Assembly: GCA_020137815.1 (NCBI GenBank)
Contig: WFME01000023.1
Coordinates: 1-25,742, forward strand
DNA: 25,742 bases
Reading direction: 5' to 3'
Origin: Hormiphora californensis
Lineage: Eukaryota > Animalia > Ctenophora
Made by a program: the position numbers and the translations under genes. The first letter of the stretch is position 1. Every line of letters starts with the position of its first letter. Below the pieces are notes generated by a model, which was not told the origin of the DNA, did not search any database, and saw only the letters and a list, made by a program, of their open reading frames with translations. This document shows, piece after piece, positions 3,567-18,183 of this stretch.

Positions 3567-4523
3567 CTATCCCACTTGGATAAGATTATTACGGATGAAG
3601 TAGCAGCCGTCAGGATCTTCTGATCGTATCCGCTTCAAAGTGGACCTTAGAGCTTTTTGCTCTTTCAGTTCAGAGGGCGTAAGATCCGGAGAGAGATAAA
3701 CAGCCGAAAACTGTTTGGAGTCTTTGAGGTTTCGTGCCTTTCTGAGGAGTGCGAGGAGAGTCGCTCTCTTCTCCAGGGATACTAAGAGCGGTCTAGGGCG
3801 CTTCTCATTTCTTTCGCCGATGCGTTTCATCGTAGTCACTTTCGGTTTCTCATTTAATTCCTCAAAAAGTTCGTCTAAAGTAGTTTTAGCTACTCTATCG
3901 GTTGTTTCTGGGAGACCAAACACAACCATGTTCTTCTCTCTTCCGGGCTGTTGGACGGGAGTAGGATGATTCACTGGTAGTGGTTTTCCCACTTTGGGGG
4001 AGGTTGCAGCACAATTCTGTGCTAGCACAGTAGAGTAGGCTTTCACCTTCTGCACCGATGCTGTCACTGTACTGAGTTGTTGCTTCTGGTGGTTGATAAC
4101 CGTTTGCTGAAGCTCGATTACGTTAACCCGATGGCGGTCAAGTTCTTCTTTACATTCACGCAGCTGTTTCTCGAGGTTTTCCACACTGATAACCGTTTCA
4201 AAATTGTTCATTGTTGCTCGGGCAAGTTTCATACTGGAGAGAAAAATACGCGAAGTAGCCTCGATTATTTCACTCGTAGTTCGGTCCTTGAGACAATGTC
4301 TAAAGTACGAACCCCAGTGCTTGCTAGGCGAAGCTAAGCTGTCGTTGGTTAACATTGAATCGGGTGCAGCTTGAATCGATCTATAACATTGAGTAAACTC
4401 ATCTGGTTTGATGCTCGTCGTGTTGTCCGAATTCAACAGGTAAACTTCAGAAACAAAGTCATCCACCGTCTCTTCTAATCGTTTTATCATAGGGTTATCG
4501 CCCTCGTACTTCGCTTCCGACAT
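3567..4523 (-). CDS. LINE ORF1-like protein (coiled coil + RRM + CTD; L1/Transposase_22-like), 318 aa from first ATG
   Basis: Coiled coil LEKQLRECKEEL...LQQTV. Motifs REKNMVVFGLPE, RIG...RPRPLLVSL and VYLSPDLT..E....KALR are typical of LINE ORF1. Confidence 0.85.
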   Translation of the reverse strand: MSEAKYEGDNPMIKRLEETVDDFVSEVYLLNSDNTTSIKPDEFTQCYRSIQAAPDSMLTNDSLASPSKHWGSYFRHCLKDRTTSEIIEATSRIFLSSMKLARATMNNFETVISVENLEKQLRECKEELDRHRVNVIELQQTVINHQKQQLSTVTASVQKVKAYSTVLAQNCAATSPKVGKPLPVNHPTPVQQPGREKNMVVFGLPETTDRVAKTTLDELFEELNEKPKVTTMKRIGERNEKRPRPLLVSLEKRATLLALLRKARNLKDSKQFSAVYLSPDLTPSELKEQKALRSTLKRIRSEDPDGCYFIRNNLIQVG

Positions 4524-4572
4524 TATCAACGTTTCGTTTTTCTGCCCTTCGGGGCTGTTACATCGGATTCAT

Positions 4573-4649: not shown

Positions 4650-5807
4650 CAGGAAGATGAATCCGATGTAACAGCCCCGAAGGGCAGAAAAACGAAACGT
4701 TGATAATGTCGGAAGCGAAGTACGAGGGCGATAACCCTATGATAAAACGATTAGAAGAGACGGTGGATGACTTTGTTTCTGAAGTTTACCTGTTGAATTC
4801 GGACAACACGACGAGCATCACACCAGATGAGTTTACTCAATGTTATAGATCGATTCAAGCTGCACCCGATTCAATGTTAACCAACGACAGCTTAGCTTCG
4901 CCTAGCAAGCACTGGGGTTCGTACTTTAGACATTGTCTCAAGGACCGAACTACGAGTGAAATAATCGAGGCTACCTCGCGTATTTTTCTCTCCAGTATGA
5001 AACTTGCCCGAGCAACAATGAACAATTTTGAAACGGTTATCAGTGTGGAAAACCTCGAGAAACAGCTGCGTGAATGTAAAGAAGAACTTGACCGCCATCG
5101 GGTTAACGTAATCGAGCTTCAGCAAACGGTTATCAACCACCAGAAGCAACAACTCAGTACAGTGACAGCATCGGTGCAGAAGGTGAAAGCCTACTCTACT
5201 GTGCTAGCACAGAATTGTGCTGCAACCTCCCCCAAAGTGGGAAAACCACTACCAGTGAATCATCCTACTCCCGTCCAACAGCCCGGAAGAGAGAAGAACA
5301 TGGTTGTGTTTGGTCTCCCAGAAACAACCGATAGAGTAGCTAAAACTACTTTAGACGAACTTTTTGAGGAATTAAATGAGAAACCGAAAGTGACTACGAT
5401 GAAACGCATCGGCGAAAGAAATGAGAAGCGCCCTAGACCGCTCTTAGTATCCCTGGAGAAGAGAGCGACTCTCCTCGCACTCCTCAGAAAGGCACGAAAC
5501 CTCAAAGACTCCAAACAGTTTTCGGCTGTTTATCTCTCTCCGGATCTTACGCCCACTGAACTGAAAGAGCAAAAAGCTCTAAGGTCCACTTTGAAGCGGA
5601 TACGATCAGAAGATCCTGACGGCTGCTACTTCATCCGTAATAATCTTATCCAAGTGGGATAGTTCCCCACTAACTCACCGTTATCAGAGAACCGTGCTAG
5701 GAGCAGGCAGTCTACTGCAGTCCCTTTCAAATTAAGGAAAACGAGTTGTCTGTATACAAACTGTGTCAGTGCGGGATATAAACTGTCATTTTTATTATTA
5801 TTATTAT
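4612..5807 (+). mobile_element. ORF1-only non-autonomous LINE-like retroelement, right arm of head-to-head pair
   Basis: Inverted near-identical copy of 3418-4610. It has 7 extra nt (CAGGAAG, 4650-4656), at least 3 substitutions and a (TTA)n tail. Confidence 0.8.
4706..5662 (+). CDS. LINE ORF1-like protein (coiled coil + RRM + CTD), 318 aa from first ATG
   Basis: Same protein as the minus-strand copy except K/T and S/T changes. An in-frame TGA at 4658 and the ATG at 4706 define the start. Confidence 0.85.
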   Translation: MSEAKYEGDNPMIKRLEETVDDFVSEVYLLNSDNTTSITPDEFTQCYRSIQAAPDSMLTNDSLASPSKHWGSYFRHCLKDRTTSEIIEATSRIFLSSMKLARATMNNFETVISVENLEKQLRECKEELDRHRVNVIELQQTVINHQKQQLSTVTASVQKVKAYSTVLAQNCAATSPKVGKPLPVNHPTPVQQPGREKNMVVFGLPETTDRVAKTTLDELFEELNEKPKVTTMKRIGERNEKRPRPLLVSLEKRATLLALLRKARNLKDSKQFSAVYLSPDLTPTELKEQKALRSTLKRIRSEDPDGCYFIRNNLIQVG

Positions 5808-6568: not shown

Positions 6569-7912
6569 GAACCGGGTTTTTTTCCACCGAACCGAACCGA
6601 ATCGAATTTGAAAAACTTTTTTACCGAACCGAACCGAACCGAACCGAACCGAATTTCGGTAATCGAACCGAACCGAACCATACAAAACTTTTTCTGTATA
6701 AATGTTTCTCTAAAAAGTCATGGAGAGCACCAATCAAGGTATTGAGAATCATTCTCTGAAATTTTGTTAAAAAATGTTTGAAAAAATTTCAAAGTCAATT
6801 TTGTGAAAAAATTTTCAAAGTCAATTTTATCGTAAATTTTCTATGTCAATTTATGCGTACGAATCGTGTTTCGAATCGGCAATGCTATACGGGAATGGTA
6901 TTGCTAATTAGCAGGATTAAACGAACCATGACTCGTGTCTCTCTAAATTTCCTAATTAGATTTGATGGGGAATCACGTATCAGCACAATCCATCTCGGAC
7001 CCACTAATTACCAACATCACTCCCGTTTAGCATTGTCGATTAGAAACACGATTCGTATACCATAATTTACTTAAAATATTTTTCACAAAAAAAATTTCAC
7101 AAAATTTCAGGTAATGATTCTCAATACCTTGATCGATGCTCTCCATGATTTTTTAGAGAAACATTTAATTTTGTGAAAAAAACTTTGTAAAATATTTCAA
7201 AGTCAATTTCGGAAAAAAAATTCTATGTCAATTTTGCCGTACGAATCGTGTTGCGAATTGGTGATGCTATGCGGCAGTGCTCTCGCTAATTAGCAGGATT
7301 TATTGAAACATGAATCGTTTCCCCTAAACTTCCTAATTAGATTTGATGGGGGATCACGTATCAGCATAATCCATCTCGGACCCACTAATTAAGCAACATC
7401 ACTCCCGCTTAGCAATACCGATTCGAAACACGATTCGTACGCAAAAATTGACATAGAAAATTTTCCATAAAATTGACTTTGAAATATTTTCCAAACTTTT
7501 TTACAAAATTTCAGAGAATGATTCTTAACACCTTGATCGGTGCTCTCCATGAATTTTTTGAAAAAAAAAGTAATTTCTGAATTTGTTGACCCTCTCATGA
7601 GGACACGATTCGACGGGAAGTCAGGTATCAAATCAATCCATATCGAACCCGCTAACTAGCGAAATCATTTCCACATAGCACCACCGATTCGAAATAGGGT
7701 TAATACGGCGAAATTGACATTGAAATCCATACAATTTTCGTGAAATAATTGGAAAATTTTGCATGAAAAAGCCCGATTTCTGGGCATTTTTTGACCAAAA
7801 AATTCGGTGGTTCGGCCAAAATTTCCTACCGAACCGAACCGAACCGAACCGCCCAAAAAACACCGAATTTCCGAACCGAACCGAACCGAACCGAATATTC
7901 GGTCGCTTCCTG
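6566..7912. mobile_element. Non-autonomous hAT-like element with (CCGAA)n subterminal repeats; left tip missing
   Basis: Right end ...TTCGGTCGCTTCCTG is followed by the 8-bp target GGCCAAAC (7913-7920), 7 nt of which recur at 6487-6493. CCGAA arrays lie at both ends. The interior has inverted (6700-6775 vs 7095-7166 and 7500-7560) and direct (6850-7060 vs 7230-7440) blocks. Confidence 0.85.
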
Positions 7913-9564
7913 GGCCAAACCTTTTCAAGTTACCAAAAGGTGCTGCCGGACAAGCTTTTGTTTCTGAAGTAAACCGTCTAATCAATGCCTGGACTATCAA
8001 ATCTGACCTTGAACAGGTGGCAATATTGGCGGTAAACACTATCGGCGCCCTTGTTCTCCAAAAACCTGGAAAAAGGTCGACCCCCAAAGAGCACACCACC
8101 GCTCTTACTAGGAGACTTGAACTCTGGAAAAACGGACAGTTCTTAGATCTATTGTCTGAGGCCAGAGCTATACAAAAACAAATTCGATCGAGTACCCAGA
8201 GTAGCGAAAGTACTAGCAAAGGGTTTGCACGCCTAATGCTCGCCGGAAAGGTGAATAAAGCCATGCGTCTTCTCTGCACATCTCACGCCGCCCCGCTCGA
8301 AGTAACACCTGACCTAATCAAGGACCTCGAGAAGAAACACCCTCCAGATGCTCCTCTAAACAGAACCCACCTTGTGTCATCTCTACCTGCACCGGGTTTT
8401 GAGAGAGTAATCTTCGACAGCATCGACGGTCTCATGATTAAGAAAGCTGCCAAATCCACCGGTGGCGGCTGTGGTCCTAGTGGGATGTCCTCTGAGCTAT
8501 GGTCCCGTATGTTGTGCTCCAAGGCATTTACCAAAGAAGGGGACAACCTAATTTCTTGTCTGGCCCGATTAACTAGAAGACTCTGCACAGAGCTGGTGGA
8601 TCCGTCACCTTTATCATCGCTTTTGGCATGTAGGTTAGTTGGACTGAGTAAAAACCAAGGAACTGGGGTTAGACCCATCGGAATAGGGGAAGTTTTGCGG
8701 CGGATAATCGGTAGAGCGGTCACCCAACATCTCAGACAAGATATTATCCAATCAGCGGGCCCGCTACAGCTGGCAGCCGGCCAGGAGGGCGGATGTGAAG
8801 CTTCTGTACATGCTATGAACGATTATTTTTCGAGAGACAATACCGAGGGTATTCTGTGTGCTGATGCTTCTAATGCATTCAATATTTTAAATCGTAAAAC
8901 TGCTTTAGTCAATATGCGTTATTTATGTCCAGTTTTTTCCGTTTTTTTTTGATTAATTTTTATCGCTCACACACCAAACTCTTCCTATACAATGGCGAAT
9001 ATATTATGTCGTGTGAAGGTACCACCCAAGGAGACAACGCTGCTTCTCCTTTCTATTCCATCTCCCTGTATCCCCTGATGAACGACCTATCGGACTGTAC
9101 GGACTTTCAATTGTTTTACGCTGACGATGGGGCTTCAGCTGGGAAACTCCATAACATCAAGAGGTGGTGGGATGAACTCTGTGAGCGTGGTCCAGGATAT
9201 GGGTATTACCCTAACGGATCAAAGTCAGTTCTCCTGGTGAAGGAGCAGTATGCCCGCGAAGCTAGAGATCTTTTTGCGGGCACAGGAGTAGTTATCACGA
9301 CAGAAGGAGTCAGGTATCTGGGATCACCTATCGGAACTGACGAATTTAAGAACAACTTCGTATCCGAAAAGGTGGAGGATTGGGTGAACCAAGTACGAAC
9401 ACTGTCTCAAATAGCTGCAACCGAACCACAGTGTGCCTACAGCGGGTATACCTTCGGTCTGTCCAAGAAATGGCTTTTTCTGATGCGGACAACAGAGGGG
9501 ATTGAAGAACAGTTTGCACCTCTTGAGAACATCATCAAGTCATCTTTCATTCCAGCTCTTATGG

Positions 9565-9648
9565 TTGGTGATGACATCCCCTATTATCTTCGCCGGCTTC
9601 GTTGCCGCGCTTCGCGCGGCCCTAGTGGAGGGGGGACCGCGTCACCAA
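9565..9648. mobile_element. 84-bp micro-insertion with short TIRs and TSD, in frame within the RT ORF
   Basis: CTCTTATGG is duplicated at 9556-9564 and 9649-9657. The ends are TTGGTGA...TCACCAA. Removal restores FIPALMGSNTPSHLRYIAALPARDGGL. Confidence 0.8.
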
Positions 9649-10981
9649 CTCTTATGGGTTCCAACACCCCTAGCCATCTGAGGTATATTGCTGCCCTACC
9701 TGCTCGAGACGGCGGTCTAGCTATCCCCATCCCGACTACACAGGCTAGTGCTGAATTTGCGAACTCTACACAGGCTACAGAACCACTGAAACAGCTGATC
9801 CTTGAACAATCTCTTCTTATCAGTGAAAAACGTGCTGAATCATGCCTTTGGGAAGCGAAAGGAGCGAAGGGGAATGTACTAAAACTAAAACGAACTATTC
9901 AAAATGCCGAAAAACAACAGGCGTGTTCACTTCTGTCCGGTACTGACAGGCGTCTATTCGACGAAATATCGTCTAGGGGAGCTTCAAGCTGGTTAACAGC
10001 TCTGCCTTTGAAAGAGCACGGTTTCGTCCTCAACAAACAGCAATACCGGGACGCCATCTTGCTGCGATACAACCTTCCCCTCGAAGATGTGCCTGTTGCA
10101 TGTGCATGTGGCAAGGCGAACACTCTCGAGCACTGTCTTTCGTGTGCCCTCGGAGGATACGTGTATTTAAGGCACAACAATATCCGTGACCTTACAGCTA
10201 ACATCCTCGTGGAAGCCGGCTGTAAAGATGTCCGCATTGAGCCGCAGCTCCTACCCATAACTGGTGAAACATTCCAATACCGTTCTACTAACACTGCTAA
10301 CAGTGCCCGTTTGGATGTTTCTGCCCGTAATGTGTGGAGTGACTTGGACAAAGTTTACACTGACATCCGTGTATTCAACAGTCTCGCGCCAACCAACATC
10401 GGCAAGTCCCTCCAGGACACTATGAGGAGACACGAGAGGGAAAAGGTATTGAATTACAACGACAGAGTCCTTCAGGTCGAGAAGGCAACTTTCACACCTC
10501 TAGTCTTCTCAACAACTGGGGTTATGGGCCCCCAAGCGGAGCTGAGGTGTTCTACAAGAAGGTTGCTAAACTTCTATCTGACAAAACGGGACACACCTAC
10601 AACGATGCCATCCGGTACATTCGTCTCCGTCTGTCTTTCTCGCTGTTGAAGACCATTCTCATCGCCATCAGGGGGTACAGGGGCAATAAATGGACACACT
10701 TTTGTAGCAAAACATACGATTTTCATCTTATTATCTGATTTATTTATACTTAACTTATTACACCCGTAAGAGTAAATTTTATTTTTATACCTTTTCATGT
10801 AAATAATATTGTACTGACATATATTCTATTTGAACCGGTACCCCGGCCTTCGCAAAAAAAAGTTTTGACAAGTTTTGAAAAGCACTGCCTTATCCCGCGC
10901 TGCGGGGCCAGTTGAAAAGTGCTGCCTTATCCCTGCTATCGGGGGCCAGCTACGTTTGCTAATGACAAGTTTTAAAATAAA

Positions 10982-12088: not shown

Positions 12089-12530
12089 ATTTCGAAGTTA
12101 GGAAGGCCAAGGCTTGGGGTACCCTAAATAAGATGAACAGAGTCTGGAATAGAAAAAAAAAATAGATGTCTAGAAAGATGAAAGTGAGGTTGTTCAGATC
12201 CACTGTTGAGACCATCTTACATCTTTCTCTACGGTCTACGGATCTGAAACGTGGACAATAACCAAGAGCCTAGGCAAGAAGATTGATGGGTATTACTCGA
12301 GGATGTTGAGGGCAGCACTGAACATCAGGTGTGCGGACAGGGTGTCAAATGCCGTGGTTTTCCAAGATATCCCTCGTGTAACTGAGAAGATAAGAAGCCA
12401 GAGACTGAGAATGGCGGGGCACCTTGCAAGACACGATGGCCTAGTGGGACATGACTGATGAACTACTTATGTGGATTGTGGAAACCAGCTCATGGCCAGG
12501 CGCGGCGTAGCAGCCCGTTACTAACATTCA
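12089..12530 (+). mobile_element. Degenerate RTE-clade LINE, C-terminal fragment, left part
   Basis: With frameshifts it translates to RKAKAWGTLNKMNRVW..KVRLFRSTVETIL..YGSETWT..RMLRAALNI..RLRMAGHLARH..PAHGQARRSSPLLTF. Confidence 0.8.
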
Positions 12531-12561
12531 AACTTTTCAACACTACAGCCCGTTACTAACA

Positions 12562-12601
12562 TTCAAACTTTTCAACACTACTTTAAACAAATTAATTTGA
12601 G
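12562..12601 (+). other. Ctenophore spliced-leader sequence forming the 5' end of the full-length LINE
   Basis: TTCAAACTTTTCAACACTACTTTAAACAAATTAATTTGAG matches, from memory, the major Pleurobrachia/Hormiphora SL. It lies exactly at the insertion junction and is followed by GC rather than a GT donor, so it is not an SL RNA gene. Confidence 0.85.
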
Positions 12602-12630
12602 GCTTGGCCTCTAGGTCCCGATGAAATAGA

Positions 12631-14430
12631 ATGGGCTCGAGGATGACTGGGGAGATAACGATAAGGCACGACAACCTTGAGAGGACGCTCCTCGAGATAT
12701 CTACTACAGACTCTGTGGTCGTGAGTAGGGACGACCTTGAACTCTTAGTTACCAGGGCATTAAATAAAACCCCTCCCCCAATCCCCACCCGGACAATTAA
12801 AAACGGCCTTGCAGTGCTTTATTCCAGTTTTATAGACTCTTTCTCAGCTGAGTCATTATTGGGTGAGCTGAACCTTCCTCCCCGGGTATCTAGAGGCAAT
12901 AGGTTCGCCTGGTATTCTGAGACTGGGGTTACATACGGCTGGGGCAACATCTCTCTTAGGCCGTCCCCCCTTCCCGTCCCCCTGTCAGCCCTCCTACAGC
13001 GAGTAAACAGGACCTTTAAAACAAAGTTTAATGGGTGCCTTATGATACGCTACATGAACGGTGATGAGAATCTACCCCTCCACCAGGATAGAGAGGATAT
13101 GAATGACCCGTCTTCCCCCATCTTTACAATATCTCTTGGGGCAACACGTTTCCTTGACTTTCTAGATGGCAGATACAGATCAGAGAGCAGTTTTGAGGGT
13201 AGTCTCACCCTGCACAATGGTGACGGAGTCATGTTTATGCCAGAGTGTCAAGACCAACTCTGGCATGGGTGTCCAAAGTACCCAGGTCAGTCAGGTGAGA
13301 GGGTGGCTCTGTCCTTCCGAAGAGTCAAGGTACCGGATAATCACTCACCCCTCAACTCCACGCCCGACCGATCGCACCAATCCCCGGCTCCGACTCCGCC
13401 GACTCTACCCGAAACTCCTGTACATACTTTACAGTCTGTTTCCTCAAACCAGCCTGAAATGTCCTCCCCGCCTCGCTACCTCCCAGACACAACTATTGTC
13501 TCCCACACTTCACCACTGACTGACCCACCGGTCTCTGAGGCACTACAATCCTCACCTCCATTCCCAGTACCAGTCTCTGAAATCGTACCAGTCTCTGAAA
13601 TCGCCCCGGTGGTCTCTGAAACCCCATCACCACCTCTCAACTCCAACACTCCACCGGTCTCAGGCATCGCCCCAGTGGGCTCTGGTCCCCCACCAGTGGG
13701 CTCTGGTCCACCACCTCTCAACTCCAACACTCCACCGGTCTCAGGCATCGCCCCAGTGGGCTCTGGTCCCCCACCTAACTCCTCCACCACCCCACCATCC
13801 TCTGCGACCCCACCGGCCGTCTCTTCCGGGCTTCCTGTCTTGCACCCTTCTCGAACTCCGGCTGAGCCACGCCACCCCACACGCCACCTCATCATCGGCG
13901 ACTCCATGGTCAGGGGTCTCAAGCTGAACTTCAACCAACACCAAGCTCAAGTTCATGCAATGGGGGGTGCCACTATCCCTGACTTGATTAGAGTGTGCAG
14001 TTCTTGGACTCGAGATTTGGACATTGATTCCATCAGTATACTAGTGGGCACCAATGACATATCTTCTCCTCATGGCATCTTAGATATATGTCATATGTAT
14101 TTGGGTCTCATTGATTTACTTAGTTACCGTTTTCCGCGTGCATCAATAAACTGTCTAAGCGTTCTACCGAGACTGGACCGTCCTGAGTTAGCCCCCCGTA
14201 TTATCAGATTTAACCAAACAATGAGGGGTGTCATTGATGACTATTTCGGGAGTAATGGTGAAATGTGTGTTGGCTGGCTTGACTGCTTTGATGATTTCTT
14301 GGAGCACTGTGGGTGCTGTGTTAATCGCTCATTGTTTGGACGAGGTATGCTCCACCCCAGTGCTCTTGGTAAGAGGCATTTAGTCAATATTTTTAAGTAT
14401 CTCTTGAGTCCGTATAATAGAGCCAGCTAG
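12631..14430 (+). CDS. LINE ORF1: AlkB-family 2OG-Fe(II) dioxygenase + Pro/Ser/Thr-rich linker + SGNH/GDSL esterase (599 aa)
   Basis: AlkB motifs: FNGCLMIRY, HQD (13081), ISLGATR, LHNGD, WHG (13264), RVALSFR. SGNH blocks: IIGDS (13897), GGAT, VGTND, LHP. Confidence 0.88.
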   Translation: MGSRMTGEITIRHDNLERTLLEISTTDSVVVSRDDLELLVTRALNKTPPPIPTRTIKNGLAVLYSSFIDSFSAESLLGELNLPPRVSRGNRFAWYSETGVTYGWGNISLRPSPLPVPLSALLQRVNRTFKTKFNGCLMIRYMNGDENLPLHQDREDMNDPSSPIFTISLGATRFLDFLDGRYRSESSFEGSLTLHNGDGVMFMPECQDQLWHGCPKYPGQSGERVALSFRRVKVPDNHSPLNSTPDRSHQSPAPTPPTLPETPVHTLQSVSSNQPEMSSPPRYLPDTTIVSHTSPLTDPPVSEALQSSPPFPVPVSEIVPVSEIAPVVSETPSPPLNSNTPPVSGIAPVGSGPPPVGSGPPPLNSNTPPVSGIAPVGSGPPPNSSTTPPSSATPPAVSSGLPVLHPSRTPAEPRHPTRHLIIGDSMVRGLKLNFNQHQAQVHAMGGATIPDLIRVCSSWTRDLDIDSISILVGTNDISSPHGILDICHMYLGLIDLLSYRFPRASINCLSVLPRLDRPELAPRIIRFNQTMRGVIDDYFGSNGEMCVGWLDCFDDFLEHCGCCVNRSLFGRGMLHPSALGKRHLVNIFKYLLSPYNRAS

Positions 14431-14521
14431 TTCTTAATCCTCATATATAGTTCAATAGGGAGTCTAGTGAAATCTCCCCAGTCATACCAACAAATTTAGT
14501 TAAGCTTACTTAAAATCGACA

Positions 14522-17500
14522 ATGATCGATTTACAACTCTATAGATTCAGAGTCGGATGCTTCCAATCTATCAAAGTACACTCTCTCTCGAAGAAGCACC
14601 GATCTCAACCATTTCCTCACTCTATTGAGGAAACGAGCAGCCGCACAGATGATCCACAACCACAACCCCCACAAAACACTCGTTCATGTCTAAAAACTAT
14701 AATCTTTCTAACAGCACTGTCTCTCTGTATCCTATTAAACTCTCTGGTTGTTTACCACCTACAGTCGCATTCAATCTCTGCTTCATCCTCCCCGTCATTA
14801 AATCTGTCCTCCCAAATACCAAGTACGCTCTTCCCTAAATACCTATTAATTACATACATTGCCTCTATCTATCCTAAAAATACATTAGTCAACAACCGTG
14901 GTCTCTATTTTATTGCTGGTCTGGCTCTCCTTCTCCTCGTTCAATGTAACCCAGGTATTAAAAACCCTGGCCCCGATAGAATTAAAATAGTATATTGTAA
15001 TGCACAGGGCCTCATACATATGAATAGCATTGGTGGCGACTGCCCTATTTTCCAAACTAAAAAACTCCTTGATCTCCAGGCATACTTGTACACACATGAA
15101 CCTGACATAGTTATAGTTAATGAAACCTGGCTCAACTCCTATGTAGGCAATAATGAAATTGTATCTGACTCTCTCTACACCATATTTAGAAAAGATAGAA
15201 GTGATATCGACAAAAACAAGTATGGTAAAAAAGGGGGCGGTGGAGTAATGATATTATGTAAAAACCATAGTGATATACAGTACTCTGCTATTATGGAGCA
15301 AACTGACCTACCAATAGTTAGTATTCTAGTTAAGCCTAAGAAAGGACCTAAGTTATGCATCTCGACCTATTACAGATACGACTACTCCGACTGTGAATCC
15401 AACAGTCAAGCTGAAAAGTATTATAAAGTTCTCTCGAAGCGATATAATTCCCTTACAATAATAGGCGACCTCAATCTTAGCTCTATAAAAAACTGGGATT
15501 TGCCTTCATCCAATGTTGGGAGACACTCTAGTTTCCTTGAAATCGTAAGTAACCTTGGTATGGTATCCCTGATAAACTCTCCTACGCATCGTTCAGGAAA
15601 TATCCTAGACCTCATTCTAACAAATAGACCTAGCATATATAATCAAGTTAAAGTTGAACAGGATCTATTAGTTAAATCTGATCATAGCACAATTAAATGT
15701 ACCATCAATTTAGGAGTCTCCATGAAAAATACTGCCAAGTTTAGAAAATTTGCATATAAGAAAGCAAACTGGGATCGGATTAACCAAGATCTGAACTCAT
15801 GTAATTGGAATGCTCTTTTTGTAGGCCTTAATGCTCGAGAATGTGTATCCTGTCTCAAATCAAAACTAGACATTATCCTAAAAAGGTACGTTCCTATGGT
15901 CACTGTTAAACCCTCCTCTCGTCCACCCTGGTTCGATGATGACCTAAAAGCTCTCCGAAAATCTGTAGAAAGAGCCCGCAAGCTTCATCTTAAGCACCCT
16001 GACGATATCACCTTAAACGACGAATACGTATCCCTGGCTGACAATTACAAACTCTCTGTAGAAGACAAAAGAGCTAGTTACTATACAGACGAGGAAATGA
16101 ACGACAATAATACTATAACTAAAAAGTTCTACAAGTATCTTAAATCTTTAGTAGGGAGCACTAGAATTCCCGATTCTGTTAGTGACAATAACAACTCTTC
16201 CTGTAGAACTTCTGAAAAATGTAACATGTTCAACAACTTCTTCTGTGCTCAATTTTCTGATATTAGTAGTTACAATACAGTAATCGATCCTAACAGGAAC
16301 CACGTAAATGACTGTAATAATCTTCTATTTAGAGAGGAGGATGTTCAAAAAATCCTCAAGGACATAAACCCCTCCAAAGCAACTGGTCCTGACAATATAG
16401 ACGGTATTGTTCTTAAAAAATGTTCTTCAGTCCTAGCTCGCCCTCTTGCATACATCTATAATCTCTCATACCATTCCAGTTATTTGCCATCAGAATGGAA
16501 AGAGGCAAATGTAGTGCCAGTCCACAAGAAAGGGGACAAGTCTCTAGTTAAAAATTATCGGCCTATATCTCTAACCTGCCTAGTAATGAAGGTATTTGAA
16601 AGACTCATTAGGGACAAGCTCTTCCTTATTTGCCAAGATAAAATTTCTCCTCATCAACATGGCTTCGTACCTAATAAATCATGCTGTACCCAGATGATTG
16701 AATTCACTGACAGCCTCGCCTACAATATAAATAACCATCTTCAGACTGATATCGTATATTTTGATTTTGCTAAGGCCTTTGATAGTGTTAATCATGATGT
16801 AATTATAGATAAGCTCCGAGATCATTACAATATTAATGGGAAAATGTTAAGTTTCATTATAGAATATCTTAGGGATAGAAAACAGCGGGTAGTTATAGAT
16901 AGTATATCCTCTGAATGGGCACCAGTACATTCTGGGGTGCCTCAAGGATCCATTTTAGGACCACTTCTTTTTGTCTTATTTATTAATGATATCACTAGTG
17001 TAATCAATCAGGGTACCAATAGTAGGCTATATGCTGATGATCTCAAAATATGGAAAAGTGTACACTCTCCCTCAGATAGCCTACAACCTGATATCGACAA
17101 CCTTCACAAATGGTCTATAGAAAACCGCATCTCCTTCCACCCAGCTAAATGTAAATTAATAAGGCTTAATCTAAATAGACGTGAAATAGCTCATTCTTAC
17201 ACTCTTGCAGGGGAATTAATTGTTTCAGTTTCCTCTGAGAAAGACCTCGGCGTTCTTATTAGTAACCGTTTGAGTTATGAGGAGCACAGGAATTCTATTC
17301 TTGCTTCCCAGAGGCAAAAGTTAGGGCTATTAAAGAGGCACAGTAAATTAGCTAGGACACCACCTGAACGGAAGACCCTATACTTGTCTCTTGTGCGGTC
17401 CTTACTAGAACATTGCTCACAAATCTGGAGACCAACTAGTACAGCTGGGATTGAAAAGTTAGAAAAACTCCAGAAGCGAGCGATAAAATGGATACTAGAT

Positions 17501-17899
17501 GAAGAAAATTCTAGCTACTCTGAGGTAGAATATTTTTCCAAGCTTGCCAACCTCAACATACCTCCTATTCGTAATAAATTCGAGCTTAATGATTTAATGT
17601 TTCTGCACAAAATAATATATGGTACCTCCCCAATCGATCTCCCTCCTTATCTCTCGTTCTTTACCCCGTCTCAGATAGTAATAAACACTAGGGCCCAATC
17701 CAATATGGATTCACTCCACCTGATGACGTCCGAGGTTCCTAGAGTTAACATATTTGAAAATTCCTTCTTCTACCGTGCCCACAAGCTCTGGAACCTTCTT
17801 CCGCTTTCCCTGAGAGCTACTTCTGATCCCATAATTTTCTCTTCTCAATTAAAAAGACATCTTTGGGATAGTTCTGGGACTGATCAGGGTGTCACTTAG
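14522..17899 (+). CDS. LINE ORF2: hydrophobic leader + APE endonuclease + reverse transcriptase (1125 aa)
   Basis: APE: NETWL, GDLN, LDL, SDH. RT: YRPISL, QHGF, DFAKAFDSV, GVPQGSILGPLLF, YADD, KDLGV. Confidence 0.96.
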   Translation: MIDLQLYRFRVGCFQSIKVHSLSKKHRSQPFPHSIEETSSRTDDPQPQPPQNTRSCLKTIIFLTALSLCILLNSLVVYHLQSHSISASSSPSLNLSSQIPSTLFPKYLLITYIASIYPKNTLVNNRGLYFIAGLALLLLVQCNPGIKNPGPDRIKIVYCNAQGLIHMNSIGGDCPIFQTKKLLDLQAYLYTHEPDIVIVNETWLNSYVGNNEIVSDSLYTIFRKDRSDIDKNKYGKKGGGGVMILCKNHSDIQYSAIMEQTDLPIVSILVKPKKGPKLCISTYYRYDYSDCESNSQAEKYYKVLSKRYNSLTIIGDLNLSSIKNWDLPSSNVGRHSSFLEIVSNLGMVSLINSPTHRSGNILDLILTNRPSIYNQVKVEQDLLVKSDHSTIKCTINLGVSMKNTAKFRKFAYKKANWDRINQDLNSCNWNALFVGLNARECVSCLKSKLDIILKRYVPMVTVKPSSRPPWFDDDLKALRKSVERARKLHLKHPDDITLNDEYVSLADNYKLSVEDKRASYYTDEEMNDNNTITKKFYKYLKSLVGSTRIPDSVSDNNNSSCRTSEKCNMFNNFFCAQFSDISSYNTVIDPNRNHVNDCNNLLFREEDVQKILKDINPSKATGPDNIDGIVLKKCSSVLARPLAYIYNLSYHSSYLPSEWKEANVVPVHKKGDKSLVKNYRPISLTCLVMKVFERLIRDKLFLICQDKISPHQHGFVPNKSCCTQMIEFTDSLAYNINNHLQTDIVYFDFAKAFDSVNHDVIIDKLRDHYNINGKMLSFIIEYLRDRKQRVVIDSISSEWAPVHSGVPQGSILGPLLFVLFINDITSVINQGTNSRLYADDLKIWKSVHSPSDSLQPDIDNLHKWSIENRISFHPAKCKLIRLNLNRREIAHSYTLAGELIVSVSSEKDLGVLISNRLSYEEHRNSILASQRQKLGLLKRHSKLARTPPERKTLYLSLVRSLLEHCSQIWRPTSTAGIEKLEKLQKRAIKWILDEENSSYSEVEYFSKLANLNIPPIRNKFELNDLMFLHKIIYGTSPIDLPPYLSFFTPSQIVINTRAQSNMDSLHLMTSEVPRVNIFENSFFYRAHKLWNLLPLSLRATSDPIIFSSQLKRHLWDSSGTDQGVT

Positions 17900-18082
17900 G
17901 TAGTCACCAAATGGGTCTTCTTTTATAGTTCTCATAATATCGAAAGTGTTTCACTTCAGCATTTAACTCGTGCTCTCTACTCCATTTTGGCGCGGTTTAA
18001 CCGTTTTTATGTATCCTGTCAAGTATCTCTCCTATTGTTCCCATGTGTATCTCTCAGTCAGTTCATTTCTCTCTTTCTCTTT

Positions 18083-18183
<101 letters not shown>

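What the first reader, a model, noticed from the sequence alone, without database searches (positions are those of the whole stretch)
12850..14430. LINE ORF1 fuses an AlkB-family dioxygenase to an SGNH esterase
Seen: an intact HxD...H iron triad (HQD, WHG) and R-x5-R (RVALSFR) in an ALKBH2/3-like context, then a repeat-containing Pro/Ser/Thr linker and a GDS/GTND/H esterase. Known: esterase ORF1s occur in CR1/L2-group LINEs, and AlkB domains occur in plant RNA virus replicases where they demethylate RNA. I do not know AlkB as a standard LINE ORF1 module. Inference: the element may erase m1A/m3C/m6A from its own RNA or cDNA, for repair or counter-defence. Caveats: the NxY Asn appears to be Ile (MIRY), and the esterase DxxH Asp is missing (GMLH).
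Basis: partly seen in the sequence, partly recalled or inferred. Interest (0 to 1): 0.85.

Follow-up and report, generated by a model that had tools for sequence, protein, structure and literature searches.

The report
LINE ORF1 carrying AlkB demethylase plus esterase
An intact jumping gene (LINE) in a comb-jelly genome makes a first protein that joins an ALKBH2/3-like nucleic-acid demethylase to the lipid esterase already known from such elements; the design is conserved and under selection in many ctenophore LINE lineages, and I found no paper describing it.

Summary
Window 12631-14430 (+) is ORF1 (599 aa) of a full-length APE+RT LINE (12562-18180).

ORF1 has four parts:
- a short helical N-terminus;
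- an AlkB dioxygenase (Pfam PF13532, E 7.6e-15; AlphaFold/Foldseek TM 0.82 to human ALKBH2);
- a 180-aa disordered Pro/Ser/Thr linker with tandem repeats;
- an SGNH esterase.

The HxD...H and RxxxxxR motifs are intact.

The fusion is not confined to this copy:
- Two 92%-identical intact copies lie on other chromosomes.
- At least four families in the same genome, 25-35% identical, carry AlkB+SGNH ORF1s followed by APE ORF2s.
- A profile search found 507 protein clusters at E<=1e-30. Of the best 150, 143 have both domains in the same order.
- Named members come only from ctenophores (Pleurobrachia, Mnemiopsis).

The catalytic residues are about 99% conserved, and AlkB dN/dS is about 0.2.

The most likely function is oxidative removal of RT-blocking base methylation (m1A/m3C type) from the element's RNA or cDNA. 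This is inferred, not shown.

Seven searches of the paper library found only an orchid Gypsy ALKBH5-like ORF as precedent. This scan had already noted the same architecture on other pieces of this genome (s1-872969 and others).

The parts
12562..18180 (+). Full-length LINE element (about 5.6 kb)
   Evidence: The 5' boundary is shared by three copies with unrelated upstream flanks (alignment A3). The 3' end is a (CT)44 microsatellite.
12562..12601 (+).
   Evidence: In two runs of the organism this segment has word depth about 100 times that of the rest and is joined to many different sequences. Earlier finding s1-874968 covers it. It is not part of this finding.
12631..14430 (+). ORF1, 599 aa
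12667..12762 (+). N-terminal helices (aa 13-25 and 33-44); possible oligomerisation region
   Evidence: AlphaFold2 model, pLDDT 61-67. dN/dS is 0.04-0.09 between subfamilies. The role is inferred.
12778..13335 (+). AlkB-type Fe(II)/2OG dioxygenase domain (aa 50-235)
   Evidence: PF13532 E 7.6e-15. pLDDT 85-98. Foldseek ALKBH2 3rzl_D E 3.7e-15, TM 0.82, rmsd 2.5 A. Family profile against PDB: ALKBH3 6.7e-23, ALKBH2 2.8e-22.
13045..13047 (+). Ile139 at the NxY Asn position (MIRY)
   Evidence: Across 158 family domains this position is T 61, S 48, N 15, Q 8, A 7, I 5, V 4.
13081..13089 (+). H151-Q-D153, the first two iron ligands
   Evidence: H in 156 and D in 155 of 158 domains.
13264..13266 (+). 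H212, the third iron ligand
   Evidence: 156 of 158 domains.
13300..13320 (+). R224-VALSF-R230, the 2-oxoglutarate-binding arginines
   Evidence: R224 in 156 and R230 in 155 of 158 domains. The Asn of the canonical RxNxTxR is Ala here and S/C/A across the family.
13336..13872 (+). Disordered Pro/Ser/Thr-rich linker (aa 236-414) with tandem repeats at 13567-13603 and 13624-13791
   Evidence: pLDDT 40-53. P+S+T make up 53%. TRF rows. dN/dS is about 0.63, with indels between copies.
13873..14427 (+). SGNH/GDSL esterase domain (aa 415-599): GDS 13897-13905, GTND 14047-14058, GMLH 14344-14355
   Evidence: PF13472 22.7 bits, below the cut-off. pLDDT above 90. Foldseek 2hsj TM 0.70 and 3dt8. Profile hit to ZfL2-1 ORF1p esterase 4c1b, E 8.5e-4. 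Family tallies.
14431..14521 (+). 91-nt spacer between ORF1 and ORF2
14522..17899 (+). ORF2, 1125 aa: APE endonuclease (aa 182-388, nt 15065-15685) and reverse transcriptase (aa 668-880, nt 16523-17161)
   Evidence: PF03372 E 1.5e-6 and PF00078 E 4.2e-27.
14954..14974 (+). 2A-like motif GIKNPGP just upstream of the APE domain
   Evidence: NPGP sits at the same position in the ORF2 of every AlkB-LINE family sampled. This position is known for CR1, L2, Rex1, Crack and Ingi clades (PMC3708506).
18092..18180 (+). (CT)44 microsatellite 3' tail

Best explanation
The region is ORF1 of an intact, recently active APE-type LINE of the esterase-ORF1 kind (CR1-group-like). Its ORF1 protein has four parts: a short helical N-terminus, an ALKBH2/3-like Fe(II)/2-oxoglutarate dioxygenase, a long disordered Pro/Ser/Thr linker, and an SGNH esterase.

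Proposed mechanism: ORF1p is translated from the LINE RNA and stays with it. The AlkB domain oxidatively removes base methylation that breaks Watson-Crick pairing and stalls reverse transcriptase (m1A/m3C type) from the template RNA, and possibly from single-stranded cDNA. This would raise the yield of full-length copies. The esterase does what it does in CR1/L2 ORF1 proteins, namely lipid or membrane association.

Shown here: domain identities and folds, intact catalytic residues, LINE context, multi-lineage conservation, and purifying selection.

Inferred: enzymatic activity, substrate, and benefit. The architecture itself is about 0.97 certain. The confidence figure below is for the mechanism.
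For: - Domains: PF13532 above its cut-off, plus a GDSL match.
- Model: two confident domains separated by a disordered linker.
- Fold: ALKBH2 TM 0.82, then ALKBH3, AlkB and ALKBH6; the SGNH part matches PAF-AH.
- Subfamily: the family profile hits ALKBH3 at 6.7e-23 and ALKBH2 at 2.8e-22, against 1e-6 for E. coli AlkB. No ALKBH1, ALKBH5, ALKBH8 or FTO hit at E<=0.01.
- Residues: iron ligands and 2OG arginines are kept in 155-156 of 158 domains from clusters less than 50% identical to each other. HxD-[N/D]-E is kept in most.
- Selection: AlkB dN/dS is 0.21 (window against L002, 8 nonsynonymous and 11 synonymous changes, binomial P 0.0013) and 0.14-0.29 in the 503-aa family in pairs with enough changes. 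This is similar to the SGNH domain, while the linker is at about 0.63.
- LINE context: ORF2 with APE+RT lies 91 nt downstream. An APE-bearing ORF follows the AlkB ORF1 in other families. A 1443-aa member (P0172) of the cluster represented by the Mnemiopsis protein reads AlkB-AlkB-SGNH-APE-RT.
- Co-divergence: pairwise identities of AlkB and SGNH correlate, r 0.79, Mantel 0 of 500.
- Precedent for the logic: plant-virus AlkB domains repair m1A/m3C and prefer RNA (PMC2553587).
Against: - No biochemical data exist.
- The Asn of NxY is Ile in this copy, and the Asn of RxNxTxR is Ala. Both Asn normally hydrogen-bond 2OG (my own knowledge of AlkB structures). The family mostly has T/S and S/C at these sites, so cofactor binding is remodelled and could be weaker here.
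- The residue after HxD is Arg here, where most relatives have N or D.
- The AlkB domains are not notably basic, median pI 6.7.
- Transcription was not shown. The runs laid were contigs of uncertain library type.
Confidence: 0.5

Rival explanations
1. Epitranscriptomic counter-defence. The AlkB domain erases a regulated mark (m6A or similar) that the host writes on LINE RNA to mark it for decay or silencing. This was proposed for the ALKBH5-like ORF of orchid Gypsy elements.
For: A TE-borne AlkB with proven m6A demethylase activity exists (PMC9289625). The conserved catalytic residues fit any demethylase role.
Against: The domain is ALKBH2/3-like. No ALKBH5 or FTO match appears at E<=0.01 in the profile-against-PDB search, and Foldseek ranks ALKBH2 and ALKBH3 first. 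In mammals m6A has been reported to promote L1, with ALKBH5 suppressing it (PMC7873242 abstract), so erasure is not obviously useful.
Confidence: 0.2
2. The AlkB domain is mainly a non-catalytic nucleic-acid-binding module. It would supply the RNA grip that esterase-type ORF1 proteins lack.
For: The ZfL2-1 esterase does not bind oligo(A) RNA (PMC3905857), so an RNA-binding partner domain would be useful. This copy has lost both 2OG-stabilising Asn residues.
Against: Iron ligands and 2OG arginines are kept in about 99% of 158 highly diverged domains, which a pure binding role would not require. The domains are not basic, median pI 6.7.
Confidence: 0.1
3. The dioxygenase acts on something other than the element's nucleic acid. 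Candidates are a host protein, host tRNA, or target-site DNA.
For: Some AlkB homologues act on proteins or tRNA (general knowledge). Tandem AlkB-AlkB-SGNH forms with two different active-site variants suggest more than one substrate.
Against: The closest solved relatives are the DNA/RNA repair enzymes ALKBH2 and ALKBH3 across the whole domain, including the substrate lid (TM 0.82 over 197 columns).
Confidence: 0.1
4. It is not part of a transposon. It would be a host AlkB-esterase gene that happens to lie next to a LINE, or an assembly artefact.
For: None beyond the general possibility.
Against: Three copies on different chromosomes share an exact 5' boundary with unrelated flanks. The ORF1-ORF2 arrangement recurs in several families. 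There are at least 27 long-ORF AlkB loci in a 110-Mb genome. Independent runs hold the sequence.
Confidence: 0.01

Closest known systems
Esterase-type (type IV) ORF1 proteins of CR1/L2/RTEX LINEs, e.g. zebrafish ZfL2-1 ORF1p (PDB 4c1b; PMC3905857)
   Same: An SGNH esterase forms the C-terminal part of a LINE ORF1, upstream of an APE+RT ORF2. The catalytic Ser, Asn and His are kept. The family's SGNH domains are basic (median pI 9.0), like the positively charged ZfL2-1 surface. The profile hits 4c1b at E 8.5e-4 over the whole domain.
   Different: ZfL2-1 has a coiled coil in front of the esterase and no enzyme there. Here an AlkB dioxygenase and a 180-aa disordered linker precede it. Similarity to 4c1b is weak. 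This copy lacks the DxxH Asp.
Human ALKBH2 and ALKBH3 (m1A/m3C repair dioxygenases)
   Same: Same fold (TM 0.82 and about 0.7), HxD...H, RxxxxxR, the Tyr of NxY, and the HxD-x-E acid. They are the best sequence and profile matches.
   Different: Identity is only 23-26%. Both 2OG-stabilising Asn residues are replaced family-wide (T/S and S/C/A; here I and A). No RKK loop is seen in the alignment. The domain is part of a transposon protein, not a host repair gene.
AlkB domains in replicases of plant RNA viruses (Flexiviridae; PMC2553587)
   Same: A selfish RNA-templated replicon carries its own AlkB domain fused into a multidomain protein. The proposed logic is the same: keep the RNA template free of methyl lesions.
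   Different: The host kingdom, replicon type (RNA virus against LINE) and fusion partner differ. The viral domains are a recent, horizontally spread acquisition. The ctenophore LINE domain is deeply diverged within the element family (mean pairwise identity 32%).
ALKBH5-like ORF of Phalaenopsis Ty3/Gypsy elements (PMC9289625)
   Same: It is the only retrotransposon-borne AlkB I found in the paper library, and its iron triad is intact.
   Different: It is an LTR element in plants, a separate extra ORF, of the ALKBH5 (m6A) subfamily, and a recent acquisition in one lineage. Here it is a LINE ORF1 domain, ALKBH2/3-like, and widespread across ctenophore LINE lineages.

Membership tests
AlkB family of Fe(II)/2OG dioxygenases (Pfam PF13532), ALKBH2/3 branch | Score above Pfam's gathering threshold | tested here: met
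   56.1 bits against 31.2, E 7.6e-15.
AlkB family of Fe(II)/2OG dioxygenases (Pfam PF13532), ALKBH2/3 branch | Double-stranded beta-helix fold with the N-terminal substrate lid | tested here: met
   AF2 pLDDT 85-98. Foldseek ALKBH2 3rzl_D TM 0.82, rmsd 2.5 A, 197 of 199 columns.
AlkB family of Fe(II)/2OG dioxygenases (Pfam PF13532), ALKBH2/3 branch | HxD...H iron triad | tested here: met
   H151, D153 and H212 are present, and invariant in 155-156 of 158 relatives.
AlkB family of Fe(II)/2OG dioxygenases (Pfam PF13532), ALKBH2/3 branch | RxxxxxR 2OG-binding arginines | tested here: met
   R224 and R230.
AlkB family of Fe(II)/2OG dioxygenases (Pfam PF13532), ALKBH2/3 branch | Asn of NxY and Asn of RxNxTxR, which stabilise 2OG | tested here: not met
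   Ile139 and Ala226 in this copy. The family has T/S (109 of 158) and S/C/A (150 of 158) at these sites. Tyr141 is kept.
AlkB family of Fe(II)/2OG dioxygenases (Pfam PF13532), ALKBH2/3 branch | 2OG-dependent oxidative demethylation of nucleic acid | not testable with these tools
   Needs an enzyme assay.
SGNH/GDSL hydrolases; LINE esterase-type ORF1 | Block I Ser (GDS), block III Asn (GxND), block V His | tested here: met
   S425, N475 and H575. Family tallies: 119 of 119, 143 of 144, and 136 of 136 aligned.
SGNH/GDSL hydrolases; LINE esterase-type ORF1 | Asp of DxxH (third member of the triad) | tested here: not met
   Gly572 (GMLH) in this family. Asp is present in 95 of 137 relatives.
SGNH/GDSL hydrolases; LINE esterase-type ORF1 | Pfam gathering threshold for Lipase_GDSL_2 | tested here: not met
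   22.7 against 32.9 bits for this copy. Met by sister families at 33.6-46.5 bits.
SGNH/GDSL hydrolases; LINE esterase-type ORF1 | SGNH flavodoxin-like fold and homology to a solved LINE esterase | tested here: met
   Foldseek 2hsj TM 0.70 and 3dt8 0.66. Profile against 4c1b (ZfL2-1 ORF1p) E 8.5e-4.
APE-type LINE of the CR1 group (CR1/L2/Rex1; RTEX not excluded) | ORF2 with an APE endonuclease followed by an RT, and ORF1 just upstream on the same strand | tested here: met
APE-type LINE of the CR1 group (CR1/L2/Rex1; RTEX not excluded) | Dispersed copies with a common 5' end and unrelated flanks | tested here: met
   Copies on C3 and C5. Alignment A3.
APE-type LINE of the CR1 group (CR1/L2/Rex1; RTEX not excluded) | Microsatellite rather than poly(A) 3' tail | tested here: met
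   (CT)44 at 18092-18180. The 3' end of other copies was not fetched.
APE-type LINE of the CR1 group (CR1/L2/Rex1; RTEX not excluded) | RT phylogeny placing it inside a named clade | not tested
   No reference LINE RT set (Repbase/RTclass1) was available. The 2A-like motif before APE is circumstantial support.
APE-type LINE of the CR1 group (CR1/L2/Rex1; RTEX not excluded) | Target-site duplications | tested here: inconclusive
   No clear duplication is seen by eye around 12562 and 18180. A 35-nt tandem duplication at 12511-12581 complicates the 5' junction.

The most novel reading that the evidence does not exclude
Ctenophore LINEs carry their own nucleic-acid demethylase as a standing part of ORF1. 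Some lineages have two differently tuned AlkB domains in tandem. This would mean that base methylation of RNA or cDNA (damage, or a host-imposed mark) is a major barrier to reverse transcription in these animals, and that LINEs answered it with a built-in eraser. It would be a LINE counterpart of viral AlkB, an example of convergent evolution across plant RNA viruses, plant LTR elements and animal LINEs.
Probability: 0.4. Interest if true: 0.8.

Novelty: new variant of a known kind. Interest (0 to 1): 0.66.

Why it matters
LINE ORF1 proteins are known as RNA chaperones (RRM, CCHC), or as esterase or PHD modules. An enzyme that edits nucleic-acid bases is not among the described types (PMC4120745 and PMC13343379 were retrieved with no occurrence of the term AlkB; PMC13343379 also holds no 'dioxygenase', '2OG' or 'oxygenase').

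A conserved, selected AlkB domain in hundreds of ctenophore LINE lineages suggests that RNA or cDNA methylation limits retrotransposition in an early-branching animal phylum. It also offers a compact natural ALKBH2/3-like enzyme with a remodelled 2OG site for biochemistry.

It makes one question directly testable: does template methylation restrict LINEs?

It also extends a pattern of independent AlkB capture by selfish RNA-templated replicons: flexiviruses, orchid Gypsy elements, and now LINEs.

Tried and rejected
- The search for homologous proteins: with the whole ORF1, with the AlkB region, and with the 113-row alignment, it returned at most one hit (P0001). The low-complexity linker took the word budget, so these blanks say nothing. 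The all-against-all HMMER search gave the real picture.
I could not fetch full elements of other families, the loci with a GDSL match but no AlkB match, or the probable host AlkB gene (C5:6329263). No AlkB tree against host genes was built.
- Expression: the look-up of sequencing runs and read laying gave only Logan contigs of uncertain library type. Near-identical sequence is present in six listed runs of the organism (two were laid) and partly in marine metagenome runs. This is not proof of transcription.
- RT clade assignment was not possible without reference LINE RTs.
- The idea that the AlkB domain is a basic RNA-coating module was rejected as the main role (median pI 6.7).
- Host gene or artefact was rejected.
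- Pfam found nothing in the neighbouring ORFs 3567-4529, 4700-5662 and 7807-8952, nor in the 79-aa translation of 12213-12449, nor in 8925-10649.
Full report
**What is there**

The window holds one complete LINE on the + strand.
- ORF1 runs 12631-14430 (599 aa). ORF2 runs 14522-17899 (1125 aa), after a 91-nt spacer.
- ORF2 has an Exo_endo_phos (APE) domain at aa 182-388 and RVT_1 at aa 668-880.
- The element ends in (CT)44 at 18092-18180.
- Two other copies, on contigs C3 and C5, align with the window copy. Similarity starts abruptly at window 12562-12567, and the three upstream flanks are unrelated. So the element is full length, about 5.6 kb, and has inserted at least three times.
- The C3 and C5 copies are almost identical to each other (ORF1 dS 0.005), so transposition was recent. 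The window copy belongs to a subfamily that differs at dS 0.13.

**ORF1 anatomy**

- Pfam gives 2OG-FeII_Oxy_2 (the AlkB family model) at aa 90-230, E 7.6e-15, well over the curated cut-off. It gives Lipase_GDSL_2 at aa 437-582 below the cut-off.
- The AlphaFold2 model was built on a 113-row alignment. It has two confident globular domains, aa ~50-235 (pLDDT 85-98) and aa ~415-597 (above 90). Between them lies a 180-residue stretch with pLDDT 40-53. Two lower-confidence helices sit at aa 13-44.
- Foldseek against the PDB puts human ALKBH2 first (E 3.7e-15, TM 0.82 on the target, rmsd 2.5 A, essentially the whole chain). ALKBH3, E. coli AlkB and ALKBH6 follow. The second domain matches PAF-acetylhydrolase-type SGNH hydrolases.
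- A profile of the ctenophore family hits ALKBH3 (6.7e-23) and ALKBH2 (2.8e-22) far better than bacterial AlkB (1e-6). It does not hit ALKBH1, ALKBH5, ALKBH8 or FTO at E<=0.01. It also hits the solved zebrafish LINE esterase ZfL2-1 ORF1p, 4c1b, at 8.5e-4.
- The linker is 53% Pro/Ser/Thr. It holds 18-, 21- and 81-nt tandem repeats and differs by indels between copies.

The two caveats are also correct.
- The NxY Asn is Ile139.
- The DxxH Asp is Gly572.
- In addition, the Asn of the canonical RxNxTxR motif is Ala226, and the residue after HxD is Arg.

In family context these are minority states.
- Over 158 AlkB domains from 150 clusters, the first Asn site is T 61, S 48, N 15, Q 8, A 7, I 5, V 4.
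- The second Asn site is S 99, C 34, A 17.
- The post-HxD site is N 68, D 53.

So the whole transposon family has a remodelled 2OG pocket, mostly Ser/Thr in place of the two Asn. This particular subfamily has gone further, to hydrophobic residues. That both Asn normally contact 2OG is my own recollection of the AlkB and ALKBH2 structures, not a tool result.

**Not a one-off**

- A six-frame search of the 110.7-Mb assembly gave 45 matches to ORF1.
- Besides the 92%-identical copies there are families at 25-35% identity with open frames of 461, 473, 503 and 517 aa. These have up to six or seven copies each. All have PF13532 plus Lipase_GDSL_2 above its cut-off. Each is followed about 100 nt downstream by an ORF, and two of the three downstream ORFs scanned hit the APE model, one above and one below its cut-off.
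- PF13532 alone rings at 35 places, a lower bound. At least 27 of these lie in 300-600-aa open frames.
- About half of the 37 GDSL matches sit just downstream of an AlkB match. The rest include probable host genes and long ORFs without a detectable AlkB. So esterase ORFs without a detectable AlkB, possibly AlkB-less LINE ORF1s, also exist in this genome.

**Beyond this genome**

- An HMMER search of 1.84 billion representative proteins with the family profile found 507 clusters at E<=1e-30.
- Of the best 150, 143 have AlkB then SGNH in that order.
- Nine are AlkB-AlkB-SGNH. Eight of these keep the iron triad and arginines in both AlkB copies; the ninth (P0112) has a degenerate first copy. In those eight the first copy has the canonical Asn and the second has T/S or another residue.
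- Only a few members carry organism names: Pleurobrachia bachei (EukProt) and Mnemiopsis leidyi KAL5265523.1. The ESM Atlas clusters with this domain pair are labelled Eukaryota, commonest Ctenophora.
- A 1443-aa member (P0172) of the cluster represented by the Mnemiopsis protein reads straight through AlkB-AlkB-SGNH-APE-RT. So the module is LINE-borne there too.
- The other members come from ENA, Logan and JGI marine assemblies. JGI calls them 'alkylated DNA repair dioxygenase AlkB'.
- I found no evidence for the fusion outside ctenophores, but the tools could not test other animal genomes directly.

**Selection**

- Between the window copy and L002, the AlkB domain has 8 nonsynonymous and 11 synonymous differences. 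That gives dN/dS 0.21, and a binomial P of 0.0013 against neutrality.
- The 503-aa family gives 0.14-0.29 in pairs with enough changes.
- The SGNH domain behaves alike. The linker is at about 0.63.
- The iron ligands and 2OG arginines are kept in 155-156 of 158 domains whose mean pairwise identity is 32%.
- Pairwise identities of the AlkB and SGNH domains across 135 proteins correlate at r 0.79, with 0 of 500 Mantel permutations reaching that value. This fits one old fusion followed by joint divergence. Related sequences inflate such a statistic, so it is support rather than proof.

**Mechanism**

- Shown: an ALKBH2/3-type catalytic core is kept under purifying selection inside a LINE ORF1.
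- Inferred: it is an active oxidative demethylase working on the element's own RNA or cDNA.
- The ALKBH2/3 affinity points to N1-methyladenine and N3-methylcytosine-type lesions. These block base pairing and stall reverse transcriptases (established knowledge). Plant-virus AlkB domains remove exactly these lesions and prefer RNA (PMC2553587).
- Rival: m6A erasure, as shown for the ALKBH5-like ORF of orchid Gypsy elements (PMC9289625). It is less likely given the subfamily.
- Rival: a binding-only role. It is hard to square with the conserved metal and cofactor ligands, and the domains are not basic (median pI 6.7, against 9.0 for the SGNH domains).
- The esterase presumably keeps the lipid or membrane role proposed for ZfL2-1 (PMC3905857).

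**Expression**

Logan contigs from two runs of the organism cover ORF1 and ORF2 at 90-100% identity. Two marine runs were also laid: the metagenome run X7 covers the 3' end of ORF1 and parts of ORF2 at 95-100%, and X9, recorded as metagenomic RNA-Seq, holds only the 40-nt head and part of ORF2. The library kinds are guesses and contigs cannot show transcripts, so transcription is not established.

**Novelty**

- Seven full-text searches found no AlkB or 2OG dioxygenase in any LINE.
- The searches retrieved two ORF1 surveys. The Jockey-superfamily survey (PMC4120745) had no occurrence of 'AlkB'. The 2026 CR1-group survey (PMC13343379) had none either, and holds no 'dioxygenase', '2OG' or 'oxygenase'.
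- Repbase and Dfam could not be searched.
- This scan had already reported the same architecture on other pieces of this genome (s1-872969, s1-871067, s1-870278, s1-875065). My results agree with the follow-up on s1-872969.
- New here are the family-wide residue tallies, the selection tests, the structure, the ALKBH2/3 assignment, the remodelled 2OG site, the tandem-AlkB forms and the domain co-divergence.

**Limits**

- The word-indexed protein search was blinded by the low-complexity linker.
- The LINE clade (CR1/L2 against RTEX) is unresolved. The microsatellite tail, the esterase ORF1 and a 2A-like NPGP motif before the APE domain (PMC3708506) point to the CR1 group.

Noticed in passing
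window 14954-14974 (ORF2 aa 145-151); also L013, L015, L017-L020, L023-L025, L027, L028: A 2A-like motif ([HN]P[DGN][IV]xNPGP) is conserved about 150-210 aa into ORF2, directly before the APE domain, in every AlkB-LINE family sampled. The key Glu of D(V/I)ExNPGP is replaced (K, I or L), as in Nematostella CR1 elements judged inactive in PMC3708506. The roughly 150 aa in front of it contain hydrophobic stretches.
   Followed up: partly
window 12562-12601 and 12511-12581: The first 40 nt of the element have word depth about 100 times the rest in two runs of the organism, and are joined to many different sequences on either side. This fits the spliced-leader reading of earlier finding s1-874968. 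A perfect 35-nt tandem duplication spans the junction and repeats the first 19-20 nt of the element plus 15-16 nt of flank.
   Followed up: partly
P0018, P0034, P0053, P0068, P0071, P0075, P0077, P0112, P0114 (P0018 named Mnemiopsis leidyi; the others unnamed ENA/Logan assemblies): These ORF1 proteins have two AlkB domains in tandem before the esterase. The first copy keeps the canonical NxY Asn and the HxD-x-E Glu. The second has T/S/other at the Asn site and a variable residue at the Glu site. In eight of the nine, both copies keep the iron triad and arginines (P0112 has a degenerate first copy). This hints at two substrate specificities.
   Followed up: partly
window 12140-12450: A decayed 3' fragment of a different LINE lies directly upstream. 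Reading the DNA by eye gives '...YGSETWT...' and '...RMAGHLARHD'-type reverse-transcriptase C-terminal motifs, with frameshifts. Pfam gave no hit on the 79-aa piece.
   Followed up: no
window 7807-10649: Two consecutive + strand ORFs (381 and 574 aa) have no Pfam match. The second contains an 'FYADDGA' stretch that resembles the RT YxDD motif, so this may be an unclassified retroelement.
   Followed up: no
window 17934-18100: Word depth rises 4- to 5-fold over the last roughly 170 nt before the (CT)n tail in both runs of the organism. This would be expected if the 3' end is shared with other, perhaps non-autonomous, elements.
   Followed up: no
G000 C4:49995, C9:90969, C10:4460925, C11:4306829, C7:4181881 and others: GDSL esterase matches lie in long open frames (569-1231 aa) with no PF13532 match nearby. 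These are candidate LINE families with an esterase but without AlkB, or with one too diverged to detect. They could not be fetched.
   Followed up: no
G000 C5:6329263-6329670: This is the best PF13532 match in the genome (106 bits). It sits in a 231-aa open frame and is only 26% identical to the LINE domain. It is probably a host AlkB homologue and the natural outgroup for dating the capture.
   Followed up: no
window 12621-12629: A two-codon upstream ORF (ATG AAA TAG) ends one base before the ORF1 start codon and is present in all three copies.
   Followed up: no
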